This document shows, piece after piece, positions 40,676 through 49,152 of a stretch of 64,000 nt of DNA. Made by a program: the position numbers and the translations under genes. A model generated the notes under the pieces. That model was not told where the DNA came from. It saw only the letters and a list, made by a program, of their open reading frames with translations, and did not search any database. The DNA lies in the IMG/VR virus record IMGVR_UViG_3300042402_002564, positions 182,503 to 246,502 of that record, one strand, 5' to 3'. Each line of letters begins with the position of its first letter. Position 1 is the first letter of the stretch.

Positions 40676-40831
40676 ATGGTCCATATAACTGATATTTACG
40701 AATTGAAGGCAAGATTAGATAAGTTAAAACATCAAATTGATAAAGAGTCTAGATATCCTGGGGAGAAGGAACTTGCCCATAAATATCTGAGCAAAGCTAT
40801 TGACTATGTGAATGAGTTACAGTTATACTAA
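40676..40831 (+). CDS. Small hypothetical protein (51 aa, MVHITDIYEL...)
   Basis: Clean ORF overlapping the next gene start. Confidence 0.5.
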   Translation: MVHITDIYELKARLDKLKHQIDKESRYPGEKELAHKYLSKAIDYVNELQLY

Positions 40832-41249
40832 TCCATGGGTCTATGATGGAAAAGTTTTTGAGTCTGATAATATACAAGATTATTTTGGTTTTGTTTATCA
40901 TATTCACTGCAATACAACTGGTAGGGACTATATTGGTAGAAAATATTTCTGGAGTTTCCGAACACCGAAGGGAAAATCTAGAAAAGTTAAATCAGAGTCT
41001 GACTGGAAAAACTATTATGGATCATGTCCAGAGCTAAAAGAAGATGTTCAAAAATTTGGCAAAGAAAATTTTACAAGAACTATTATTTCATTACATAAAA
41101 CAAAGGGCAAAACTAACTTTGAAGAAACAAGACAATTATTTACAAAAAACGTCCTTACAGAATCCCTTGACGACGGAACCCCGAGGTACTACAATAGCAA
41201 CATCCTCAACAGGTACTTCCGAAAAGATTATTATGGAAAAGACGACTGA
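40812..41249 (+). CDS. denA: GIY-YIG endonuclease (T4 endonuclease II-like)
   Basis: GFVY...YIGRK...W..YYGS...YYN.NI. Confidence 0.75.
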   Translation: MSYSYTNPWVYDGKVFESDNIQDYFGFVYHIHCNTTGRDYIGRKYFWSFRTPKGKSRKVKSESDWKNYYGSCPELKEDVQKFGKENFTRTIISLHKTKGKTNFEETRQLFTKNVLTESLDDGTPRYYNSNILNRYFRKDYYGKDD

Positions 41250-42477: not shown

Positions 42478-42660
42478 ATGGAAGACATTAAAAAACAATA
42501 TCCAAGTCCATCAGATTTAAATAATCTATATGGACATACCGATTTGGAAGGATTTTCCAAATATCTTGGTGTAAATTATGATACTCTTCTTGAAATAAAT
42601 AGAAAGAATGCTGAAGTTATTCGAAAATCGGCAAAGGGGTTGACAGAGCAAGACGTTTAG
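42478..42660 (+). CDS. Small hypothetical protein
   Basis: 60 aa ORF; overlaps the -35 of the tmRNA promoter. Confidence 0.45.
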   Translation: MEDIKKQYPSPSDLNNLYGHTDLEGFSKYLGVNYDTLLEINRKNAEVIRKSAKGLTEQDV

Positions 42661-42668
42661 GGTACTAT
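42640..42668 (+). promoter_or_regulatory. Sigma70-type promoter for tmRNA/tRNA-Arg
   Basis: TTGACA-17 nt-TACTAT. Confidence 0.7.
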
Positions 42669-42674
42669 ATAGAT

Positions 42675-42911
42675 TGTTCAGGAGGAGAGATCCACTGGCA
42701 TTTCGGACTGGGGTTCGACTCCCCACAACTCCATAAATCAAGGGGTTGACAAGGTTTCGACGGGGTGTTATGATCTTATCTGTTGATGGAACAAACAACA
42801 AACGCCAACAAAATCGTGGCATTCTCTCGTAGCAAAGTTGCTACCTTAGTTTGAGAGACGGGGTGACGACTACCTTGTAATCCAAAGTCGCGGGCAGTGG
42901 AATGCTGCCAC
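42675..42911 (+). ncRNA. ssrA: Circularly permuted (two-piece) tmRNA, cyanobacterial type
   Basis: T-arm plus acceptor 3' strand CAACTCC-A (to 42733), 8-nt spacer, GGGGTTG..TTCGAC 5' end (42742), G3:U70; tag ANKIVAFSRSKVATLV* at 42804-42854; outer ends approximate. Confidence 0.9.
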
Positions 42912-42915
42912 TTAT

Positions 42916-42989
42916 GCCTCAGTAGCTCAGTGGACTAGAGCATCCGCCTTCTAAGCGGTTGGCCGCAGGTTCGAATCCTGCCTGAGGCG
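42916..42989 (+). tRNA. tRNA-Arg(UCU)
   Basis: Cloverleaf, anticodon TCT. Confidence 0.92.
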
Positions 42990-43317
42990 TTGACTTTTAA
43001 AATAAAAAGTCTTATAAATAATAACACTTAGGTCGAAAACAATGTCTTATCCAATGCCCAAACAGTTTAGTAATCTCGATTGCCGTTATTGGCATATTGA
43101 GGGTACTCCCCTGTTTGTGGATATGGATAAACATATGTAGTATGTAATCCATAAAAACAAAAAGACAGGGGAGAGAAACCAAAAAGTTTCCTCCCCTTTT
43201 TTGTTGCCTGTGACAGGTTCCTAAGTGTCCACCAATCTCCCCTAAGAGACCAAACGGTGGTATTCTAATCAAGTGGTCGAGAGAGACCACGATTTGCACC
43301 TTGACAATTTAACCCTT

Positions 43318-43390
43318 GGGTCTGTAACTCAGTTGGTAGAGTAGCGGGCTTTTAACCTGTAAGTCGTCGGTTCGAGCCCGACCAGACCCA
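43318..43390 (+). tRNA. tRNA-Lys(UUU)
   Basis: Cloverleaf, anticodon TTT. Confidence 0.92.
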
Positions 43391-43428
43391 TTGACCGCCA
43401 CAGTTCGGTCGTTAAACATAAACTGTTC

Positions 43429-43519
43429 GGGAGAGTGGCTACTGTTGGCAATATGTGTGGCTGCGGTCTGTAAAACCGTTACATCGGAACCATCGGGGGT
43501 TCAATTCCCTCCTCTCCCA
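43429..43519 (+). tRNA. tRNA-Tyr(GUA), atypical long D-loop
   Basis: gcggt-CTGTAAA-accgt, long variable arm, T-arm. Confidence 0.8.
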
Positions 43520-43523
43520 CCTT

Positions 43524-43596
43524 GACCCTATAGTGAAGTGGTCTATCACGCTACCCTGTCACGGTGGTATCACGGGTTCGAATCCCGTTAGGGTCG
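43524..43596 (+). tRNA. tRNA-Asp(GUC)
   Basis: Cloverleaf, anticodon GTC, G73. Confidence 0.92.
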
Positions 43597-43775
43597 TTGG
43601 GAGTCAGTATTCTAACTCCCACGCATTCTTCAGAGGTTGCCAGTTTGCAGAAGAATGTTGTAGTAATAACTGGAATTGGGGAGGGATTTCTAACCACCAT
43701 CGGATGATGGCAGGATTCATAAGGCTACGAAGCGTAATCCGTAAGTAACTTCGTGTGGGATACCCCTCCCATCAA

Positions 43776-43851
43776 GGTCCCATCGTCTAATTGGTCAGGA
43801 CGCGACCCTTTCAAGGTTGAAACGCGGGTTCAAACCCCGCTGGGACTACCA
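43776..43851 (+). tRNA. tRNA-Glu(UUC)
   Basis: Cloverleaf, anticodon TTC, CCA encoded. Confidence 0.92.
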
Positions 43852-43852
43852 A

Positions 43853-43929
43853 CGGAATGTAGCTCAGTTTGGTAGAGCTCTGGTTTTGGGAACCAGTTGT
43901 CGCAGGTTCGAATCCTGTCATTCCGACCA
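43853..43929 (+). tRNA. tRNA-Pro(UGG)
   Basis: Cloverleaf, anticodon TGG, CCA encoded. Confidence 0.93.
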
Positions 43930-44002
43930 CGGGGAATAGCTCAGTTGGTAGAGCACATGCCTGAAGAGCATGGTGTCGGTGGTTCAATTCCACCTTCCTC
44001 GG
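43930..44002 (+). tRNA. tRNA-Phe(GAA)
   Basis: catgc-CTGAAGA-gcatg. Confidence 0.88.
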
Positions 44003-44139
44003 CTTGGGTTGCTGCCCGATATGAGAAACACTCCTGTATTTCTAGGATACGGTAGGGTGAAAACTCGGAATTACCTCTGCCCCGTCTCTTGGGGATGCGA
44101 ATTGAGGAAAGGTAAAGGGAAGAGACAGCAACCCATATT

Positions 44140-44212
44140 GGAAACATAGCTTAGTTGGTAAAGCATTCGACTGATAATCGAAAGACCACTGGTTCGAGTC
44201 CAGTTGTTTCCA
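44140..44212 (+). tRNA. tRNA-Ile(GAU)
   Basis: Cloverleaf, anticodon GAT. Confidence 0.93.
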
Positions 44213-44299
44213 TAGGACTCCAGCAAGGTGCTTGCTAGGATATAAAAGACTGACGCCTCCCTCTTCAGAAAGAGTACCCAGCAGGTCAGCGTCCATTTT

Positions 44300-44371
44300 G
44301 GCAGTGTAGTTCAGTGGTAGAACAAGAGATTCATACCCTCTATGTCGGTAGTTCAATTCTACCCACTGCCT
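44300..44371 (+). tRNA. tRNA-Met(CAU)
   Basis: Cloverleaf, anticodon CAT. Confidence 0.82.
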
Positions 44372-44372
44372 T

Positions 44373-44443
44373 GTGTCGTTAGCCTAGTGGTAAGGCAGTG
44401 GTTTGTGGAACCACCTAGATGGGTTCAATTCCCATACGACACC
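44373..44443 (+). tRNA. tRNA-His(GUG)
   Basis: Anticodon GTG, C73. Confidence 0.88.
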
Positions 44444-44445
44444 CC

Positions 44446-44524
44446 GTTCAGGTGGCAGAGTGGTCGAATGCGGAAGTCTGCAAAACTTCTATTACCGTGG
44501 GTTCGAATCCCACCCTGAACTCCA
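44446..44524 (+). tRNA. tRNA-Cys(GCA)
   Basis: Anticodon GCA, U73, CCA. Confidence 0.92.
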
Positions 44525-44528
44525 AAAA

Positions 44529-44599
44529 GTTGGATTGGTGTAACGGTAGCACGACGGTCTCCAAAACCGTTAGTGGGAGTTCAAATCTCTCATCCTTCG
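44529..44599 (+). tRNA. tRNA-Trp(CCA), two acceptor-stem mismatches
   Basis: acggt-CTCCAAA-accgt; acceptor GTTGGAT/ATCCTTC. Confidence 0.75.
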
Positions 44600-44604
44600 C
44601 CTAT

Positions 44605-44677
44605 GCCCTCGTAACTCAGTGGCTAGAGTATCCGCCTTCTAAGCGGTTAGTCGTAGGTTCGAATCCTACCGAGGGTG
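44605..44677 (+). tRNA. tRNA-Arg(UCU), second copy
   Basis: Cloverleaf, anticodon TCT. Confidence 0.92.
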
Positions 44678-44681
44678 CTTT

Positions 44682-44755
44682 GTCCTCTTAACTCAGTGGA
44701 CCAGAGTGCTTGGCTACGAACCAAGAAGTCGCAAGTTCAAATCTTGCAGAGGACG
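44682..44755 (+). tRNA. tRNA-Arg(ACG)
   Basis: cttgg-CTACGAA-ccaag. Confidence 0.92.
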
Positions 44756-44850
44756 CTTGACAAACTTACAAAAGTTTGTTACTATATAATAGTGATAGAG
44801 GTTGAGTCCCTGTTACATCCTTATGAGGTGTATCACACTCAATCCATCAA

Positions 44851-44925
44851 AGTGGGGAAGTGTAACGGTTGCACAGAAGTCTCATAAGCTTCAAGAAGGA
44901 GGTTCAATTCCTCCCCCCGCCACCA
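44851..44925 (+). tRNA. tRNA-Met(CAU), initiator-like
   Basis: Anticodon CAT, 1:72 mismatch, CCA encoded. Confidence 0.78.
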
Positions 44926-44928
44926 CAT

Positions 44929-45001
44929 TCCCTTATAGCTCAATTGGCAGAGCACGGAGCTGTTAACTCTGGGGTTCCTGGTTCGAGTCCAGGTGGGGGA
45001 G
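44929..45001 (+). tRNA. tRNA-Asn(GUU)
   Basis: Cloverleaf, anticodon GTT, G73. Confidence 0.92.
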
Positions 45002-45133
45002 TTTTAATCTAGGAATAAAATGATTAATATTTTTAAAAAAATCTATTTTAATATAAAAGCATATATTGAATTTAAAAAAGTATCTAAAAAATGTAGAGAA
45101 GAAGACCCATACATCTATAAATAAAACTAAAAA

Positions 45134-45904
45134 ATGACTAATAATATATTAGTTACATTTGGATGTAGTTGGACTTTTGGTGAAGGATCTGGATATGTTG
45201 ATGGAATGGATCAAAATGAATATGAAGAAATTCAACAGGATGAAAAAATATGTTATGATAATTCTTGGAGAAAAATCATAGTAGATCATTATAATCTTAG
45301 ACACATAAACTTTTCTGTTCCAGGAAGTAGCAATCAAAGACAGTTTAAAACTGCTAGGGAATATTTTGTAACAGAAGAATGGAAAAAATTAATTAGTGAA
45401 CGCAGAAATAATGTTGTTGTTTTGTGGGGAATTACCAGTACATATAGAAATTATTTTTGGTGTAAAGATACTAATAGATACCAAAACATTTTTTATTCTA
45501 AATCTAAATATGATAGATACCAAGACAAATTGGCAAAAGCAATGATGTCATGGTCCTATGTTAAAGAGGTTGAGGAAGAAGTTGTAAAAAATGAAATATT
45601 ATTTTTTAATCAATATTTTAAATTGGTTGGTGTAAAAAATATGTGGTTTGATACTTTTAATTCTTTAGATTATAAAGAAAAATTTGATAATTTTTTAGAT
45701 CAATATAAAGAACAGAGAGATCTTTTATCGATGCTTTGTTATGAACATGCTAGAAAATTAAATGGCAGATTAGTTTTGAATAATAATTTTAAATATGCTG
45801 AAGAAAATGGATTAATAAATTTAATTAGTTTTCATCCTAAAAAAGAACAATATAAAATTATTGGTGAATATTTTATTAGAAAATTGAAAAAATACTTCAA
45901 ATAA
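45134..45904 (+). CDS. SGNH-hydrolase-like hypothetical protein
   Basis: FGCSWTFG block I, GSSN, C-terminal HP. Confidence 0.6.
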   Translation: MTNNILVTFGCSWTFGEGSGYVDGMDQNEYEEIQQDEKICYDNSWRKIIVDHYNLRHINFSVPGSSNQRQFKTAREYFVTEEWKKLISERRNNVVVLWGITSTYRNYFWCKDTNRYQNIFYSKSKYDRYQDKLAKAMMSWSYVKEVEEEVVKNEILFFNQYFKLVGVKNMWFDTFNSLDYKEKFDNFLDQYKEQRDLLSMLCYEHARKLNGRLVLNNNFKYAEENGLINLISFHPKKEQYKIIGEYFIRKLKKYFK

Positions 45905-45954
45905 ATCAATAAATAGTTGACAAAATAATTTGTCTCTGTTAAAATAAAATCATC

Positions 45955-46026
45955 GGGCGATTAACTCAGCGGTAGAGTGGCCTCCTTACAAGTGGTAAGT
46001 CACTGGTTCGATTCCAGTATCGCCCA
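45955..46026 (+). tRNA. tRNA-Val(UAC)
   Basis: Anticodon TAC; TTGACA promoter upstream. Confidence 0.9.
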
Positions 46027-46173
46027 TATATAAAATGAAGCATATATAACTTATGAAAGATAAAAAATTCAAAAAATTAATTCAAAAACCTTTAAGATTT
46101 CATCATCAAGATATCCATGAAGAACTTGATAGTATTAAATTATCATTAGCAGATATTAGGAGATTAATGGAAA

Positions 46174-46431
46174 ATGTTAGTAGTGAGATGCAAAGATTGC
46201 AACAAAGAGTTGACAAGTCATCCATCTAAAACTCAGTGTTGTGGATGTTCTAATATGATGACTGTCTGTGCTGATAACATATCAGCCATTGATTTAACTA
46301 AAGTAATTATTATTAATTCAAATAATAAAAAACCTCATAAAAAAACAAGTTTATTTTCTCCAGAAGAACTTGAGTATCAAGAATCTAGAAGAAAAAGAAA
46401 AGTTCGCAAATTAGATTTTGAAATACGTTAA
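46174..46431 (+). CDS. Small Zn-ribbon-like conserved cyanophage protein
   Basis: CKDC...CCGCSN; RRKRKVRKLDFEIR. Confidence 0.65.
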   Translation: MLVVRCKDCNKELTSHPSKTQCCGCSNMMTVCADNISAIDLTKVIIINSNNKKPHKKTSLFSPEELEYQESRRKRKVRKLDFEIR

Positions 46432-46471
46432 ATCTTAACTAAATAAGAAAATAAAGTTTTCTTATTAACTT

Positions 46472-46558
46472 GGAAGGGCAATCCGATTGGCGACGGAACC
46501 TGTCTTGAAAACAGTTGAGGTGTTAAAGCCCTTGGGGGTTCGACTCCCCCTCCTTCCG
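46472..46558 (+). tRNA. tRNA-Ser(UGA)
   Basis: Anticodon TGA, long variable arm, G73. Confidence 0.9.
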
Positions 46559-46657
46559 TTTAACAATTTTTTAATTTGTGTTATAAAATGAACACAATAC
46601 ATTGACGTTTAAAAATTAAAAACTATTATATAGTAGTACAACTACTTATAAACCCCA

Positions 46658-46813
46658 ATGGATGATCATACTTACCAAAATTGGGTGAAGATTAAAGAAA
46701 CCTTTGAGTCTTCTGGTAATACAAATAACATGTTTTATCGTAGGGCCTGTGAAATAGTAAAAACTAAAAGAGACCCTTTAGCAAAGTTTTTTGGTGATAC
46801 TAATAATGGATAA
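46658..46813 (+). CDS. Small hypothetical protein (MDDHTYQNWVKIK...)
   Basis: Clean ORF after a TTGACG promoter; below track cutoff. Confidence 0.55.
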   Translation: MDDHTYQNWVKIKETFESSGNTNNMFYRRACEIVKTKRDPLAKFFGDTNNG

Positions 46814-47044
46814 AACAATTATATCTGCAATAATAATTTTTACATTAATTGGTTTATTCATCAGATGGGGACTTACAAACGCATATGCGTAAGTAAAGAT
46901 AATTTAAATGGAGAGAAAGATGATTTTTCATATTGTAGAGACTCTTGCAGCGAGTCCAGTTTGGTTGTTCTTTTGCGGTTTTGGCTTGACAGTTGTTCCT
47001 TTTATGGGTATAATGATTATACACCGAGATAAATAATCTTATTA

Positions 47045-47118
47045 CGGGGTGTAGCTCAGTTTGGTAGAGCACTGCTTTTGGGAAGCAGGGGCCGTAGGTT
47101 CGAATCCTATCACCCCGA
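47045..47118 (+). tRNA. tRNA-Pro(UGG), second copy
   Basis: Cloverleaf, anticodon TGG. Confidence 0.92.
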
Positions 47119-47322
47119 TTAGTAAAATCTTTGTAATTTTACTATTTAAATTTTAGTTAATGATTTTTTTAAATGGAATCACAACAGGAAATTTCTAAAA
47201 TTGAATCTATAGATTTTACTAATGAGTCAAGTAAAGATGCATCAGAGACAGATATCAAAGAGTTGATAGAGGTCTTGACAAACCACAACGATGCATGTTA
47301 ACTTTGATTTGTTGAAACACAC

Positions 47323-47397
47323 GGGACTGTCGCCTATTGGTTAAGGCCCACTGCTTATAACGGTGTGAACTGAGTTCAATTCTCAGCAGTCCTACCA
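47323..47397 (+). tRNA. tRNA-Ile(UAU)
   Basis: cactg-CTTATAA-cggtg, CCA encoded. Confidence 0.88.
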
Positions 47398-47398
47398 A

Positions 47399-47470
47399 GG
47401 GAGTATAGCTTAATGGTTAGAGCGGCCTGCTTATAACGGGTTAGTCTGGGTTCAACTCCCAGTATTCCTA
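47399..47470 (+). tRNA. tRNA-Ile(UAU), second divergent copy
   Basis: gcctg-CTTATAA-cgggt. Confidence 0.88.
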
Positions 47471-47499
47471 TTGCTATTCGCTATTTGCGAATAACGAAT

Positions 47500-47572
47500 G
47501 CTCGTTTAGCCATCTGGTGAAGGCAGCGAACTCATAATTCGCCTCAGGAGAGTTCGATCCTCTCAACGAGCA
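47500..47572 (+). tRNA. tRNA-Met/Ile2(CAU)
   Basis: gcgaa-CTCATAA-ttcgc. Confidence 0.85.
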
Positions 47573-47649
47573 CTCGGACAGAATTTAATCTGTCCATCTT
47601 GACTTCTCCAAGTCAACCCCTTATAATATTAAGGTCAACATTCAAAACA

Positions 47650-47865
47650 ATGACTCTTACAACTAAATTCAAGAAAGACATTCAAACTCTTCGCGGTGCT
47701 GCAAACGGAGATTTTTATCTCGATGTAAAGAATCCGAAACTTTATAAAAAAGTTCGCAGATATTATGAAGGTGAAGGTGTAGTGTTCTCTGGTGATCCTT
47801 TGGATGATTATGAAATGCTAATGGAATATCTCTATCAAGATCTTGAAACTGTAGAAGTTGCCTAG
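47650..47865 (+). CDS. Conserved cyanophage hypothetical protein
   Basis: LDVKNPKLYKKVRRYYE.EGV.FSGDPLDDY; TTGACT-TATAAT promoter upstream. Confidence 0.7.
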   Translation: MTLTTKFKKDIQTLRGAANGDFYLDVKNPKLYKKVRRYYEGEGVVFSGDPLDDYEMLMEYLYQDLETVEVA

Positions 47866-47907
47866 TCATGGAGAGACTATAAAAACCCTGGTCGGGAGCA
47901 ACCCCTT

Positions 47908-48141
47908 ATGGATAAAACAACTATACTTAGGTATGTTGGTAATGCACTCCTCATAATTGGATATTACATTCTTTTATGGGGAGATGAAAAAATTGGATTA
48001 ATTGTTAAATTTCTTGCTGGAATCTTGTTACTTCCTTCATTTGTTTATTTAAAAATGTGGGATTCTGTAACAATATGTGGATTTTATGCTTTTATTGAAA
48101 TTACTAGATTAATCCATCTTTTCGCCACGGATGGGCGTTAA
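47908..48141 (+). CDS. Small membrane protein
   Basis: Three hydrophobic segments. Confidence 0.55.
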   Translation: MDKTTILRYVGNALLIIGYYILLWGDEKIGLIVKFLAGILLLPSFVYLKMWDSVTICGFYAFIEITRLIHLFATDGR

Positions 48142-48142
48142 C

Positions 48143-48275
48143 AGTACTGGTGGAGTCAAATGACCCTCATTTTGGTTTCTTGCTTTTCCATTAAAAAGCA
48201 AGTGGTGCGGATGGGGAATTCTTTCTCCGCCTGGTTTCTTGCCTCCAGTTAAAGGGCAAGTGGCGAGCCTGAATT
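48143..48275 (+). ncRNA. manA-like structured RNA motif
   Basis: CTGGTGGAGTC..GACCC followed by two GGTTTCTTGC..CC..AAA..GCAAGTGG modules next to the tRNA cluster; recognised from memory, not searched. Confidence 0.6.
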
Positions 48276-48339
48276 TACTAAGATGGGTAAATCCCATCTT
48301 TTTTTATACCATAAAATAAATACATTTTTAATTCTTATT

Positions 48340-49152
48340 ATGGTAGAAGTATCTCACTTAGAATGGCATATAACACATTCATGTAATTTTATGTGTCAGG
48401 GGTGTGGGCATTTTACTAATGATGGATATAATGAGCATATATCAATTGATGATTTAAAAAAATGGTATTCACTTTGGAAAAATAAAATAAAACCCAAAGA
48501 ATTATCAATACTCGGTGGAGAACCTTTATTACACAAAGATTTAATTGATATAATTTACATGACAAAAGAGGAATGGAATATTCAAGAAGACCAATATTAT
48601 GAGATAGTTACTAATGGTGTTTTAATTGATAGGCATCCAGAATTACCAAAAGCTTTATATGATACTAATTGTGTCATGACAGTATCAATGCATTCTTATG
48701 ATAAAGAATACTTAAAAGTGTTTTTAAAATCTTTATCTAAAATAAATGAATGGGTTGAATTATATGGTATTAATGTAGTATTAAATGATTCTGCTAATCA
48801 TTGGATAAAAACCTATCATGGTAGTGGTAAAAACATACTTCCTTTTGAAGACAATGATCCACAAATGAGTTGGGATAGATGCCCATCAGGACAACAGAAT
48901 TTTCAATTATATAATGGAAAAATGTATAAATGTTCGCCACTTGCATATCTACAACTTAAAAAAAGAAAATATGGAGATCAATTATCACCAAAATGGGATC
49001 CATATTTAAAATACAAACCATTATCACCAGATTCTACTGAAGAAGAAATATATGAATTTTTTAATAGAGGATCAGAATCTGTCTGTAGCATGTGTCCTAA
49101 GAACCCTCAAAAATTTATAAAGTCTAATCCGATGAAAAAATTCATTGACTGA
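48340..49152 (+). CDS. Radical SAM protein with C-terminal auxiliary Cys cluster
   Basis: CNFMCQGC, GGEP, TNG, C-terminal C...KC...CSMC. Confidence 0.85.
   Translation: MVEVSHLEWHITHSCNFMCQGCGHFTNDGYNEHISIDDLKKWYSLWKNKIKPKELSILGGEPLLHKDLIDIIYMTKEEWNIQEDQYYEIVTNGVLIDRHPELPKALYDTNCVMTVSMHSYDKEYLKVFLKSLSKINEWVELYGINVVLNDSANHWIKTYHGSGKNILPFEDNDPQMSWDRCPSGQQNFQLYNGKMYKCSPLAYLQLKKRKYGDQLSPKWDPYLKYKPLSPDSTEEEIYEFFNRGSESVCSMCPKNPQKFIKSNPMKKFID

What the first reader, a model, noticed from the sequence alone, without database searches (positions are those of the whole stretch)
44005..44135. Unexplained ~130-nt pseudoknotted RNA between tRNA-Phe and tRNA-Ile
Seen: a perfect 10-bp terminal helix TGGGTTGCTG/CAGCAACCCA and a long hairpin (CCGA/TCGG, CACTC/GGGTG, CTGTATT/GATACGG). 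A second domain has CCTC/GAGG or TTACC/GGTAA pairings and a CCCC/GGGG hairpin whose loop GTCTCTT is complementary to AAGAGAC near the 3' end. It is GC-rich, has no credible ORF and sits flush between tRNAs, so tRNA processing would release it. Inference: a discrete ncRNA (tRNA mimic, decoy or ribozyme) that I cannot assign to a family.
Basis: seen in the sequence. Interest (0 to 1): 0.65.

Follow-up and report, generated by a model that had tools for sequence, protein, structure and literature searches.

The report
New structured RNA in phage tRNA arrays
The 135 bases between tRNA-Phe and tRNA-Ile encode a conserved, pseudoknotted non-coding RNA that recurs in the tRNA gene arrays of several unrelated cyanophages, matches no catalogued RNA family, and has an unknown function.

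Summary
Window 44004-44138 (+) fills the gap between tRNA-Phe and tRNA-Ile in a 246.5-kb T4-like cyanophage with 27 tRNAs and a tmRNA. It matches no Rfam 15 family, even at E<=10.

It is one member of a family. I found about 50 loci holding 28 distinct sequences, plus three distant variants. The carriers are uncultured phage contigs, the isolate S-CBWM1 and an 87-kb GC-rich phage. Nearly all copies sit flush between two same-strand tRNAs, but the flanking tRNAs differ between phages.

- **Supported by covariation:** the terminal helix P1, the variable hairpin P3, a 7-bp P4 and the hairpin P5 (17 pairs with double changes, 0 of 500 shuffles as good).
- **Pseudoknot:** it never varies in the main family. 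In the three distant variants it is kept with different sequences.
- **Not supported:** TTACC/GGTAA is rejected.

My best reading is a discrete, trans-acting RNA that is transcribed with the tRNAs and released by tRNA-end processing. This makes it a positional analogue of T4 RNAC/RNAD and of GOLLD/ROOL. Its target is unknown. Ribozyme, riboswitch and tRNA-mimic readings have no support but are not all excluded.

The parts
43930..44003 (+). Upstream flank: tRNA-Phe(GAA). Its 3' processing would set the 5' end of the element.
   Evidence: ARAGORN; Rfam tRNA 67.4 bits.
44004..44138 (+). The whole element, a 135-nt structured non-coding RNA that fills the inter-tRNA gap.
   Evidence: Covariance model R1 scores 157.3 bits at 44005-44139. 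It is a single copy in the 246.5-kb genome.
44005..44014 (+). P1, 5' strand (TGGGTTGCTG).
   Evidence: Pairs with 44126-44135. 8 of 10 pairs show changes on both sides, and 98.5% of cells are paired. The helix has an entirely different sequence in S-CBWM1, L173 and L207.
44126..44135 (+). P1, 3' strand (CAGCAACCCA).
44015..44019 (+). Invariant CCCGA. This is unresolved.
   Evidence: CCC/GGG is paired in 41/41, 41/41 and 41/41 (40 C-G, 1 U-G) aligned copies, by RNAalifold. P2 is 91% paired, with no covariation, and is broken in the CCCAAT and TCGTTAAA variants.
44020..44028 (+). Conserved junction strand TATGAGAAA.
   Evidence: Nearly invariant in 28 distinct sequences. Recognisable as GA.AAAC in the distant variants.
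44029..44059 (+). P3, a variable hairpin. The base is CACTC/GGGTG and the distal stem is CTGTATT/GATACGG.
   Evidence: The base pairs covary (AU to GC in 6 sequences; UG, AU and CG at the fourth pair). The distal part differs in length and sequence but stays a hairpin, giving whole-element lengths of 127-162 nt in the main family.
44058..44072 (+). The most conserved core, TGAAAACTCGGAATT (consensus UGAAAANUCGGAAUU).
   Evidence: Present in all members, including the distant variants L173, L207 and L100b.
44071..44077 (+). P4, 5' strand (TTACCTC).
   Evidence: Pairs with 44104-44110. 4 of 7 pairs have changes on both sides. The central A.A becomes U-A, A-U or C-G in some members.
44080..44094 (+). 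P5 hairpin, CCCC/GGGG, with the 7-nt loop GTCTCTT.
   Evidence: 100% of cells are paired, and two pairs covary (CG/AU/GC and CG/GC).
44085..44090 (+). Pseudoknot, loop strand (TCTCTT).
   Evidence: Complementary to 44120-44125. It never varies in the main family. Distant variants keep loop/tail complementarity with other sequences: UGGAU/AUCCA, GAAAG/CUUUC and UCUCG/CGAGA, with shuffle p of 0.02, 0.08 and 0.03.
44095..44103 (+). Conserved strand ATGCGAATT between P5 and the P4 3' strand.
   Evidence: ATG.GAATT is invariant in the main family. It is replaced by longer inserts in the distant variants.
44104..44110 (+). P4, 3' strand (GAGGAAA).
44111..44119 (+). Conserved purine strand GGTAAAGGG.
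   Evidence: GG[T/C/A]AAAGGG across the family. AAGGCAAA in the distant variants.
44120..44125 (+). Pseudoknot, 3' strand (AAGAGA), directly 5' of the P1 3' strand.
44139..44213 (+). Downstream flank: tRNA-Ile(GAT). RNase P cleavage at its 5' end would set the 3' end of the element.
   Evidence: ARAGORN; Rfam tRNA 79.6 bits.

Best explanation
This is a gene for a discrete, compactly folded non-coding RNA. It belongs to a family not previously catalogued that occupies a 'tRNA slot' in phage tRNA arrays.

Fold. A 9-10-bp closing helix (P1) leads into a junction built from invariant purine-rich strands. One arm (P3) is variable. The other arm (P4-P5) folds back so that the P5 loop pairs with the six bases immediately 5' of the P1 3' strand. 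That pseudoknot can stack on P1.

Shown: the family exists, the helices covary, the + strand is the functional strand, and the RNA is phage-borne and moves between unrelated phages.

Inferred:
1. It is transcribed as part of the polycistronic tRNA precursor.
2. It is released by the host's tRNA-end nucleases: RNase P at the 5' end of the downstream tRNA, and RNase Z or RNase E plus exonucleases behind the upstream tRNA. The closed P1/pseudoknot end makes it a stable RNA.
3. It acts in trans. Its invariant junction forms a binding surface for a protein, RNA or small ligand of translation or tRNA metabolism, for example as a decoy or sponge against a host factor.

My rough odds: discrete structured RNA family about 0.9; co-transcription and release by tRNA processing about 0.6; trans-acting binder about 0.45; specifically an anti-defence decoy about 0.15.
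For: Family and structure:
- The model R1 finds 41 full-length copies, 28 of them distinct, at 104-164 bits.
- 93.8% of cells are paired and 17 pairs carry changes on both sides. None of 500 shuffles reached this, and slid controls gave 43-56% paired.
- G-U pairs such as U.G in P3 and P1 exist only on the + strand.
- The pseudoknot is retained with different sequences in the distant variants.

Context:
- 42 of 54 element copies (53 loci) lie within 3 nt of a same-strand tRNA on both sides.
- The flanking pair differs between phages: Phe|Ile, Asp|Glu, Asp|Ile, Glu|Ile, Lys|Leu, Leu|Met, Ile|Leu and Gly|Asn.
- No promoter-like or terminator-like site lies on the + strand between 42775 and 44757.
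- GC content is tRNA-like in an AT-rich genome.

Independence from tRNAs: L156 carries the element behind ORFs, with no tRNA in 2.1 kb, a hairpin before it and a U-tract after it.

RNA evidence: exact 151-170-nt pieces in wetland metatranscriptome contigs span 43871-44037 and 44038-44188. The AT-rich gap 43020-43271 has zero depth in all four runs.

Phage-specific:
- The only real hit in 185,579 species genomes is a 4.3-kb tRNA-array contig in a MAG.
- There is no convincing hit in 151 sampled cyanobacterial genomes.

Precedent:
- T4 rnaC and rnaD lie flush behind tRNA-Arg and are stable RNAs of unknown role (PMC3014915, PMC9697503).
- GOLLD and ROOL lie near phage tRNA islands (PMC12286853).
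Against: - No direct evidence exists for a mature, stable RNA species or for its ends. The RNA-library data are low-depth contigs, and DNA carry-over is not excluded.
- No partner was found. No protein is shared by all three complete RNA-positive phages and absent from the RNA-negative relative S-CREM1.
- The main family is shallow: many junction positions are invariant simply because the sequences are close.
- The three distant variants were recognised partly by eye, and L207 is below the model's threshold.
- P2 versus CCC/GGG is unresolved, so the junction topology is uncertain.
Confidence: 0.6

Rival explanations
1. It is a self-cleaving ribozyme of a new class that cuts the tRNA precursor in cis, helping to separate neighbouring tRNAs or setting its own ends.
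For: It has a compact pseudoknotted fold with invariant junction nucleotides, and it sits at RNA-processing junctions. Small ribozyme classes are common in phages (general knowledge). Two metatranscriptome contigs abut exactly at 44037|44038, though this is probably a low-coverage accident.
Against: No Rfam ribozyme model (hammerhead, twister, twister-sister, pistol, hatchet, HDV-like, hairpin) hits at E<=10. Host RNase P and RNase Z already process flush tRNAs, as at the many 1-3-nt tRNA-tRNA junctions of the same array. L156 has no tRNA to process. Contigs span both tRNA/element junctions uncut.
Confidence: 0.1
2. It is a riboswitch-like aptamer that senses a metabolite, or a tRNA, and controls read-through or processing of the downstream part of the array.
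For: The invariant junction and pseudoknot architecture is typical of aptamers. Cyanophages carry other metabolite-linked RNA motifs, and wcaG and PhotoRC-II are in this window.
Against: There is no expression platform. There is no terminator-like site or ribosome-binding site behind P1 in the window. The downstream gene differs between phages. No riboswitch model hits. In L156 it lies at the 3' end of ORFs.
Confidence: 0.07
3. It is a building block of a homo-oligomeric RNA assembly, as shown for ROOL and GOLLD and in a 2026 preprint for the small cyanophage manA motif, perhaps acting on tRNAs or ribosomes.
For: It has the same genomic habitat as ROOL and GOLLD, namely phage tRNA islands (PMC12286853). 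Short cyanophage RNAs can form cages (bioRxiv 10.64898/2026.07.01.735769). Two conserved self-complementary AAUU tracts lie at 44069-72 and 44100-03.
Against: This is argued purely by analogy. There is no sequence or model similarity to those RNAs. The AAUU tracts overlap P4 and may be intramolecular.
Confidence: 0.1
4. It is a passive structured spacer or a decayed tRNA remnant with no function of its own.
For: It occupies a tRNA-sized slot. S-CREM1 has a tRNA-derived cloverleaf in the same Phe|Ile slot with the same UUGGG...CCCA ends. L051 shows a truncated copy fused to a tRNA 3' half.
Against: It has no tRNA features. Single-stranded segments are nearly invariant across unrelated phages while the helices covary. 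It was transferred between unrelated phage lineages and to different slots. It also occurs outside arrays.
Confidence: 0.06
5. It is a DNA-level element, such as a homing-endonuclease target or recombination site, or a short protein-coding gene.
For: HNH (phrog_16726) and GIY-YIG endonuclease genes sit in or beside these arrays. A 45-codon ORF starts at 44021.
Against: The covariation follows RNA pairing rules, including strand-specific G-U pairs. The ORF is interrupted or frame-shifted in relatives.
Confidence: 0.02

Closest known systems
Bacteriophage T4 RNAC (species 1, 139 nt) and RNAD (species 2, 119 nt)
   Same: These are small stable RNAs encoded flush within a T4-type phage tRNA cluster, on the tRNA strand. 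They lie 1-6 nt from their neighbours, are similar in size to the element, and have an unknown function (PMC3014915, PMC9697503).
   Different: No homology is detectable. Model R1 gives no hit with filters off, local alignment p is 0.08 and 0.3, and nhmmer finds nothing. T4 rnaC ends in a tRNA-like T-arm and acceptor, and the element has none.
GOLLD, ROOL and Drum RNAs (Rfam)
   Same: They are orphan, elaborately structured RNAs of phages and prophages that cluster with tRNA genes. Their function is unknown (PMC12286853).
   Different: The element is 4-6 times smaller than GOLLD and ROOL. It has no match to any of these models at E<=10. Its carriers are cyanophages.
Cyanophage RNA motifs wcaG, manA, PhotoRC-I/II and glnA
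   Same: They are conserved structured RNAs carried by cyanomyoviruses. wcaG and PhotoRC-II occur in this same window.
   Different: Those motifs lie in 5' UTRs of protein genes as cis-regulatory candidates. This element lies between tRNAs, or at the 3' end of ORFs in L156, and matches none of their models.
tRNA-like RNAs (bacterial Y RNA YrlA; the S-CREM1 slot element)
   Same: They are excised with or like tRNAs, and the 5' and 3' ends form a closing helix.
   Different: The element has no T-arm or D-arm and no YrlA hit in the interval. The phage genome has no TROVE/Ro60 or RtcB gene.
Small pseudoknotted aptamers and self-cleaving ribozymes (pistol, hatchet, twister-sister, preQ1-II, SAM-II and similar)
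   Same: They share a hairpin-loop-to-3'-tail pseudoknot and invariant junction nucleotides.
   Different: No model matches. The genomic context is neither a 5' UTR nor a ribozyme-typical one. Activity is untested.

Membership tests
tRNA (RF00005) / tmRNA | Cloverleaf with a T-arm (GTTCRANYC) and D-arm, detected by ARAGORN or the tRNA covariance model. | tested here: not met
   No call falls inside 44004-44138.
T4 rnaC/rnaD-type tRNA-cluster RNAs | Encoded flush within a phage tRNA cluster, on the tRNA strand. | tested here: met
T4 rnaC/rnaD-type tRNA-cluster RNAs | Sequence or structure homology to T4 rnaC or rnaD. | tested here: not met
   Model R1 run with filters off on L385 scores at most 6 bits. 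Smith-Waterman against shuffles gives p = 0.08 and 0.3, and nhmmer finds no hit.
T4 rnaC/rnaD-type tRNA-cluster RNAs | Accumulates as a stable processed RNA during infection. | not testable with these tools
   Only metatranscriptome contigs were available, and they give no ends or levels.
GOLLD / ROOL / Drum | Match to the Rfam covariance model. | tested here: not met
   No hit at E<=10.
Known self-cleaving ribozyme classes | Match to the class consensus (Rfam models). | tested here: not met
Known self-cleaving ribozyme classes | Site-specific self-cleavage. | not testable with these tools
   This needs an in vitro assay.
Riboswitch | An aptamer followed by an expression platform, upstream of a regulated gene class. 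| tested here: not met
   There is no terminator-like site behind P1. The downstream neighbours are varying tRNAs.
Y RNA-like (YrlA) / Ro60 system | A YrlA model match and a Ro60 (TROVE) partner gene. | tested here: not met
   YrlA hits fall only on true tRNAs. TROVE and RtcB are absent from the complete phage genome.
RNase P RNA | Match to the RNase P models, including the P4 pseudoknot with CR-I and CR-V. | tested here: not met
   By eye, GAAAAGUCGG and GGUAAAGGG resemble CR-I and CR-II strings, but no Rfam RNase P hit appears at E<=10. At 135 nt the element is far too small.

The most novel reading that the evidence does not exclude
The RNA is the founding member of a new functional class of phage 'tRNA-array RNAs' with an activity of its own. 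Its invariant junction, which includes three UGNRA pentads that could form T-loop-like modules, would bind tRNAs or a tRNA-directed host enzyme. It would thereby protect or tune the phage's own translation apparatus. Alternatively it might assemble into a multimer. In either case it would finally give a function to the kind of RNA that T4 RNAC and RNAD have represented for 50 years.
Probability: 0.2. Interest if true: 0.85.

Novelty: new member of a known kind. Interest (0 to 1): 0.6.

Why it matters
Phage tRNA clusters have been known since the 1970s to carry extra stable RNAs (T4 RNAC and RNAD). More recently they were found to neighbour giant orphan RNAs (GOLLD, ROOL). None of these has a known function.

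This element adds a small, well-defined and strongly conserved family to that group:
- Its secondary structure is clear and backed by covariation.
- It has spread horizontally between unrelated cyanophages.
- It is present in a cultured phage-host pair (S-CBWM1 / Synechococcus CBW1002), so the question can be tested directly.
- At about 135 nt, with a pseudoknot, it suits structure determination.

It also matters for annotation, because 130-nt 'gaps' in phage tRNA arrays are not empty spacer.

Tried and rejected
- **Rfam.** I ran a gathering-threshold search on the window, E<=10 on 42500-48500, E<=10 on 43995-44145, and E<=10 on the L207 variant. The element got nothing. The only hit in the interval is a chance CRISPR-DR35 match on the minus strand, at 14 bits and E = 3.
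- **T4 rnaC/rnaD homology.** Rejected. The shared 9-mer AUGAGAAAC with the rnaD 5' end is not significant (p = 0.08).
- **TTACC/GGTAA pairing.** Rejected, because variants break it without compensation.
- **Coding ORF.** Rejected.
- **Bacterial copies.**
  - The genome contigs pattern scan gave 17 places, and only L100 is real. L100 is a 4.3-kb tRNA-array contig binned in a Chitinophagaceae MAG, and it holds two copies.
  - L102 (Roholtiella, 25.9 bits) lacks the P5 loop/pseudoknot and was pre-selected by the pattern.
  - G151 (28.6 bits) lies inside an 81-codon ORF.
  - I judged both L102 and G151 to be chance.
- **Spaced-motif scans for distant members.** These returned mostly chance hits in coding DNA. 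Only L173/L374 and L207 were real.
- **Protein-partner search.** I compared all ORFs of G000, S-CBWM1, G001 (all RNA-positive) and S-CREM1 (RNA-negative).
  - The only protein common to the three RNA-positive phages is also in S-CREM1.
  - The G000/S-CBWM1-specific hits are an HNH homing endonuclease (phrog_16726) and a small protein of unknown function (phrog_507). Both lie next to the element in S-CBWM1 but elsewhere in G000.
  - They look like vehicles or passengers of transfer rather than partners.
- **tmRNA linkage.** G000 and S-CBWM1 have a tmRNA and S-CREM1 has neither RNA, but G001 has the distant variant without a tmRNA. No firm association follows.
- **Kink-turn reading of the P2/P3 internal loop, by eye.** The required G.A/A.G tandem is not there.
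- **Metatranscriptome lay-down.** Only contigs at depth 2-8 were available. They give no ends, strand or level.
- **Literature.** No paper in the library holds the conserved 14-mers. The 2023 catalogue of about 10,000 viral candidate RNAs (PMC10690425) has no supplement held, so I could not check whether this motif is among them.

Full report
**Where it lies**

The window is bases 182503-246502 of a 246.5-kb virus record with direct terminal repeats. It is an AT-rich (GC 0.338) T4-like cyanophage, and its closest GenBank relative at this locus is Synechococcus phage S-CREM1 (Kyanoviridae). The genome carries 27 tRNAs, a permuted cyanobacterial-type tmRNA, and the cyanophage motifs wcaG and PhotoRC-II.

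The finding lies in the densest part of the tRNA array. tRNA-Phe ends at 44002/3 and tRNA-Ile starts at 44139/40. The 135 bases between them have tRNA-like GC (0.47-0.48), while non-RNA DNA around the array has 0.21-0.35. No promoter-like or terminator-like site lies on the + strand between 42775 and 44757.

**Checking the observation**

The + strand folds to -47.4 kcal/mol, z = -3.5. The minus strand folds about as well (z = -3.8), so folding energy alone does not decide the strand.

No tRNA, tmRNA or Rfam family matches the interval. This holds at gathering thresholds, at E<=10 over 6 kb, and at E<=10 on the 151-nt interval alone.

A 45-codon ORF starting at 44021 is not conserved. Relatives have early stops, and family lengths differ by non-multiples of three.

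**It is a family**

- BLAST against 50,697 GenBank phages found one relative, in the isolate S-CBWM1. That phage is an Aokuangvirus, not T4-like, and there too the element lies inside a tRNA array, between tRNA-Gly and tRNA-Asn.
- Pattern scans of IMG/VR and JGI metagenomes, followed by a covariance model (R1, built from 11 sequences with my hand-drawn structure), gave 41 full-length matches at 104-164 bits. 28 of them are distinct sequences.
- One truncated copy (L051) is fused to a tRNA 3' half.
- There are three distant variants, listed here:
  - a second, divergent copy on L100 (31.6 bits);
  - L173/L374, in a complete 87.5-kb, GC-58% phage (33 bits);
  - L207, which is below the model's threshold and was recognised by the shared core and architecture.
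- S-CREM1, the closest isolate to the window phage, lacks the element. In the same Phe|Ile slot it carries a 97-nt tRNA-derived cloverleaf with two T-arm-like hairpins.

**Context of the copies**

I tabulated 54 element copies in 53 loci. 42 of them have a same-strand tRNA within 3 nt on both sides, and the element typically fills a 131-138-nt gap (162 nt in L049, whose P3 is longer). The flanking pair varies: Phe|Ile in 26, Asp|Glu in 8, Asp|Ile in 6, Glu|Ile in 2, and single cases of Lys|Leu, Leu|Met, Ile|Leu, Gly|Asn, Glu|Asp, Leu|Leu and Leu|Lys.

A few copies are not flush. L113 and L129 have 43 nt to the next tRNA and none close upstream. L156 has no tRNA at all in 2.1 kb. There the element follows protein-coding ORFs, is preceded by a hairpin and is followed by a U-tract. 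So it behaves as a self-contained RNA gene that usually, but not necessarily, rides in tRNA arrays.

**Structure**

On the model-fitted alignment, 93.8% of cells are standard pairs, against 86.8% in shuffles and 43-56% in slid controls. 17 of 36 pairs have changes on both sides, and none of 500 shuffles reached that. The alignment was fitted to my structure, so the paired percentage leans towards it. The double changes do not.

| Helix | Window sequence | Support |
|---|---|---|
| P1 | 44005-14 / 44126-35 | 8 of 10 pairs covary; fully different sequence in S-CBWM1, L173 and L207 |
| P3 base | CACTC / GGGTG | 2 pairs covary; the distal hairpin is free in length and sequence |
| P4 | UUACCUC / GAGGAAA (7 bp) | 4 pairs covary; the central A.A becomes U-A, A-U or C-G |
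| P5 | CCCC / GGGG | 2 pairs covary, 100% paired |

G-U pairs such as U.G in P3 would be C.A on the other strand. The RNA is therefore the + strand, the same strand as the tRNAs.

The pseudoknot UCUCUU/AAGAGA never varies in the main family, so that alignment neither supports nor refutes it. In each of the three distant variants, however, a hairpin loop inside the P4-enclosed domain is complementary to the stretch just 5' of the P1 3' strand, and the sequences differ: UGGAU/AUCCA, GAAAG/CUUUC (plus GAG/CUC) and UCUCG/CGAGA. Individual shuffle p-values are 0.009-0.08. I chose the loops by eye, so these p-values are optimistic. I regard the pseudoknot as probable.

CCGA/TCGG has no covariation and is mismatched in the CCCAAT and TCGTTAAA variants. 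RNAalifold instead pairs the invariant CCC (44015-17) with the invariant GGG (44117-19), and that pairing holds in all 41 rows. If CCC/GGG is right, the AAGAGA pseudoknot strand is a bulge between P1 and a 3-bp P1b, and P3 and P4/P5 form a three-way junction with invariant purine-rich strands. TTACC/GGTAA is rejected.

**What stays constant**

Across all members, including the distant ones, the constant parts are UGAAAANUCGGAAUU, AAGG[U/C/A]AAA(GGG) and CCCGA...GA.AAAC. All of them are predicted to be largely unpaired. Helices covary while junction strands are invariant, which is the usual signature of an RNA whose tertiary fold or binding surface is under selection.

**Who has it**

It appears to be phage-borne.
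- The exact-pattern scan of one genome for each of 185,579 prokaryote species returned only one real locus. That locus is a 4.3-kb contig made almost entirely of tRNA genes, binned into a Chitinophagaceae MAG, and it carries two copies.
- In 151 cyanobacterial genomes drawn evenly from the phylum, the model gave only two weak hits. One is inside an ORF, and the other lacks the pseudoknot loop and had been pre-selected by the pattern. I consider both chance. This is 'not found in those searched', not 'absent'.
- The carriers span T4-like phages, S-CBWM1 and an unrelated 87-kb phage, so the element has moved horizontally.
- An HNH homing endonuclease (phrog_16726) sits inside the tRNA arrays of several carriers, next to the element in S-CBWM1. 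A GIY-YIG SegE-like gene lies just upstream of the window's array. These are plausible vehicles for the transfer.

**Expression**

Three wetland metatranscriptome runs from a single study hold exact pieces of this array, and a freshwater run from a second study holds similar pieces with mismatches. In the wetland runs, exact 151-170-nt contigs cover 43854-44004, 43871-44021, 43871-44037 and 44038-44188. These span both tRNA/element junctions. The AT-rich 43020-43271 gap has zero depth in all four runs.

This fits co-transcription with the tRNAs. It does not prove it, because depth is 2-8, the data are contigs, and DNA carry-over cannot be excluded.

**Comparison with known RNAs**

T4 rnaD and rnaC lie 1 and 6 nt behind tRNA-Arg and rnaD respectively. 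[quoted passage not shown] The element is a positional analogue of these but not a detectable homologue. T4 rnaC is visibly tRNA-like at its 3' end, and so is the S-CREM1 slot element. This element is not.

GOLLD and ROOL share the habitat, phage tRNA islands (PMC12286853), but not the size or the model. No TROVE/Ro60 or RtcB gene is present that would suggest a Y-RNA system. String resemblances to RNase P CR-I and CR-II that I noticed by eye have no model support.

**Function**

Function is not established. I commit to the following as most likely. The RNA is made as part of the tRNA precursor. It is freed by RNase P and RNase Z-type processing of its neighbours, and it is stabilised by the closed P1/pseudoknot end. 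It acts in trans through its invariant junction.

The partner search found no phage protein that tracks the RNA. A host factor, an RNA (tRNA) or self-assembly therefore remain the candidates. The ribozyme, riboswitch, multimer and inert-spacer readings are listed as rivals, each with its test.

**Limits of this work**
The census and the diversity are therefore lower bounds.
- E-values from the quickly calibrated model are rough.
- The 2023 catalogue of viral candidate RNAs could not be checked for this motif.

Noticed in passing
window 43598-43775 (+): A second conserved, GC-rich non-tRNA element of 178 nt lies between tRNA-Asp and tRNA-Glu. It has two hairpins plus a long-range GGGGAGGG/CCCCTCCC helix. 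It is shared with S-CREM1 (L001:2255-2424) and with L018, L110, L130 and L132, with apparent compensatory changes. Exact pieces appear in wetland metatranscriptome contigs. It has no Rfam hit, and its MFE z-score is only -1.4.
   Followed up: partly
L001:2574-2670 (S-CREM1, OP535465.1 about 44479-44575): In the same Phe|Ile slot, S-CREM1 has an unannotated 97-nt tRNA-like cloverleaf with two T-arm-like hairpins and an 8-bp acceptor-like stem. It keeps the UUGGG...CCCA ends of the element.
   Followed up: partly
window 42644-42945 (+): The phage encodes a permuted (two-piece, cyanobacterial-type) tmRNA with tag ANKIVAFSRSKVATLV. tmRNAs also occur in S-CBWM1 and in the arrays of L008, L018/L019, L024 and L069. 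S-CREM1 and the 87-kb phage G001 have none.
   Followed up: partly
L051:6286-6412 (-): A truncated copy of the element (its first 105 positions) is fused to the 3' half of a tRNA. This is evidence of recombination inside arrays.
   Followed up: no
L100:2621-2751 and 2846-2983: A 4.3-kb contig binned into a Chitinophagaceae MAG consists of a tRNA array with two copies of the element, one canonical and one divergent. It is probably a mis-binned phage fragment.
   Followed up: partly
window 40812-41249 (+); L008, L115, L131, L002:1127-1585: Homing endonuclease genes border or interrupt these tRNA arrays. A GIY-YIG SegE-like gene lies upstream of the window's array, and an HNH gene (phrog_16726) lies inside several arrays. 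This recalls segB in the T4 tRNA cluster.
   Followed up: partly
window 43429-43521 and 46471-46559 (+): Two long tRNAs are called oddly. A 93-nt 'tRNA-Arg(gcg)' has a weak tRNA-Sec match (31 bits), and S-CREM1 annotates a tRNA-Tyr in that slot. tRNA-Ser(tga) just passes the tRNA-Sec gathering score (48.8 against 47).
   Followed up: no
window 42991-43316: A 326-nt AT-richer gap (GC 0.38) between tRNA-Arg and tRNA-Lys is conserved in more than 25 related loci, yet has zero depth in all four RNA runs. Its nature is unexamined; it could be a small ORF or a regulatory region.
   Followed up: no
L156:54-188 (-): One copy of the element lies outside any tRNA array. It sits behind ORFs, preceded by a GC hairpin and followed by a U-tract, which suggests a free-standing transcription unit or 3'-UTR location.
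   Followed up: partly
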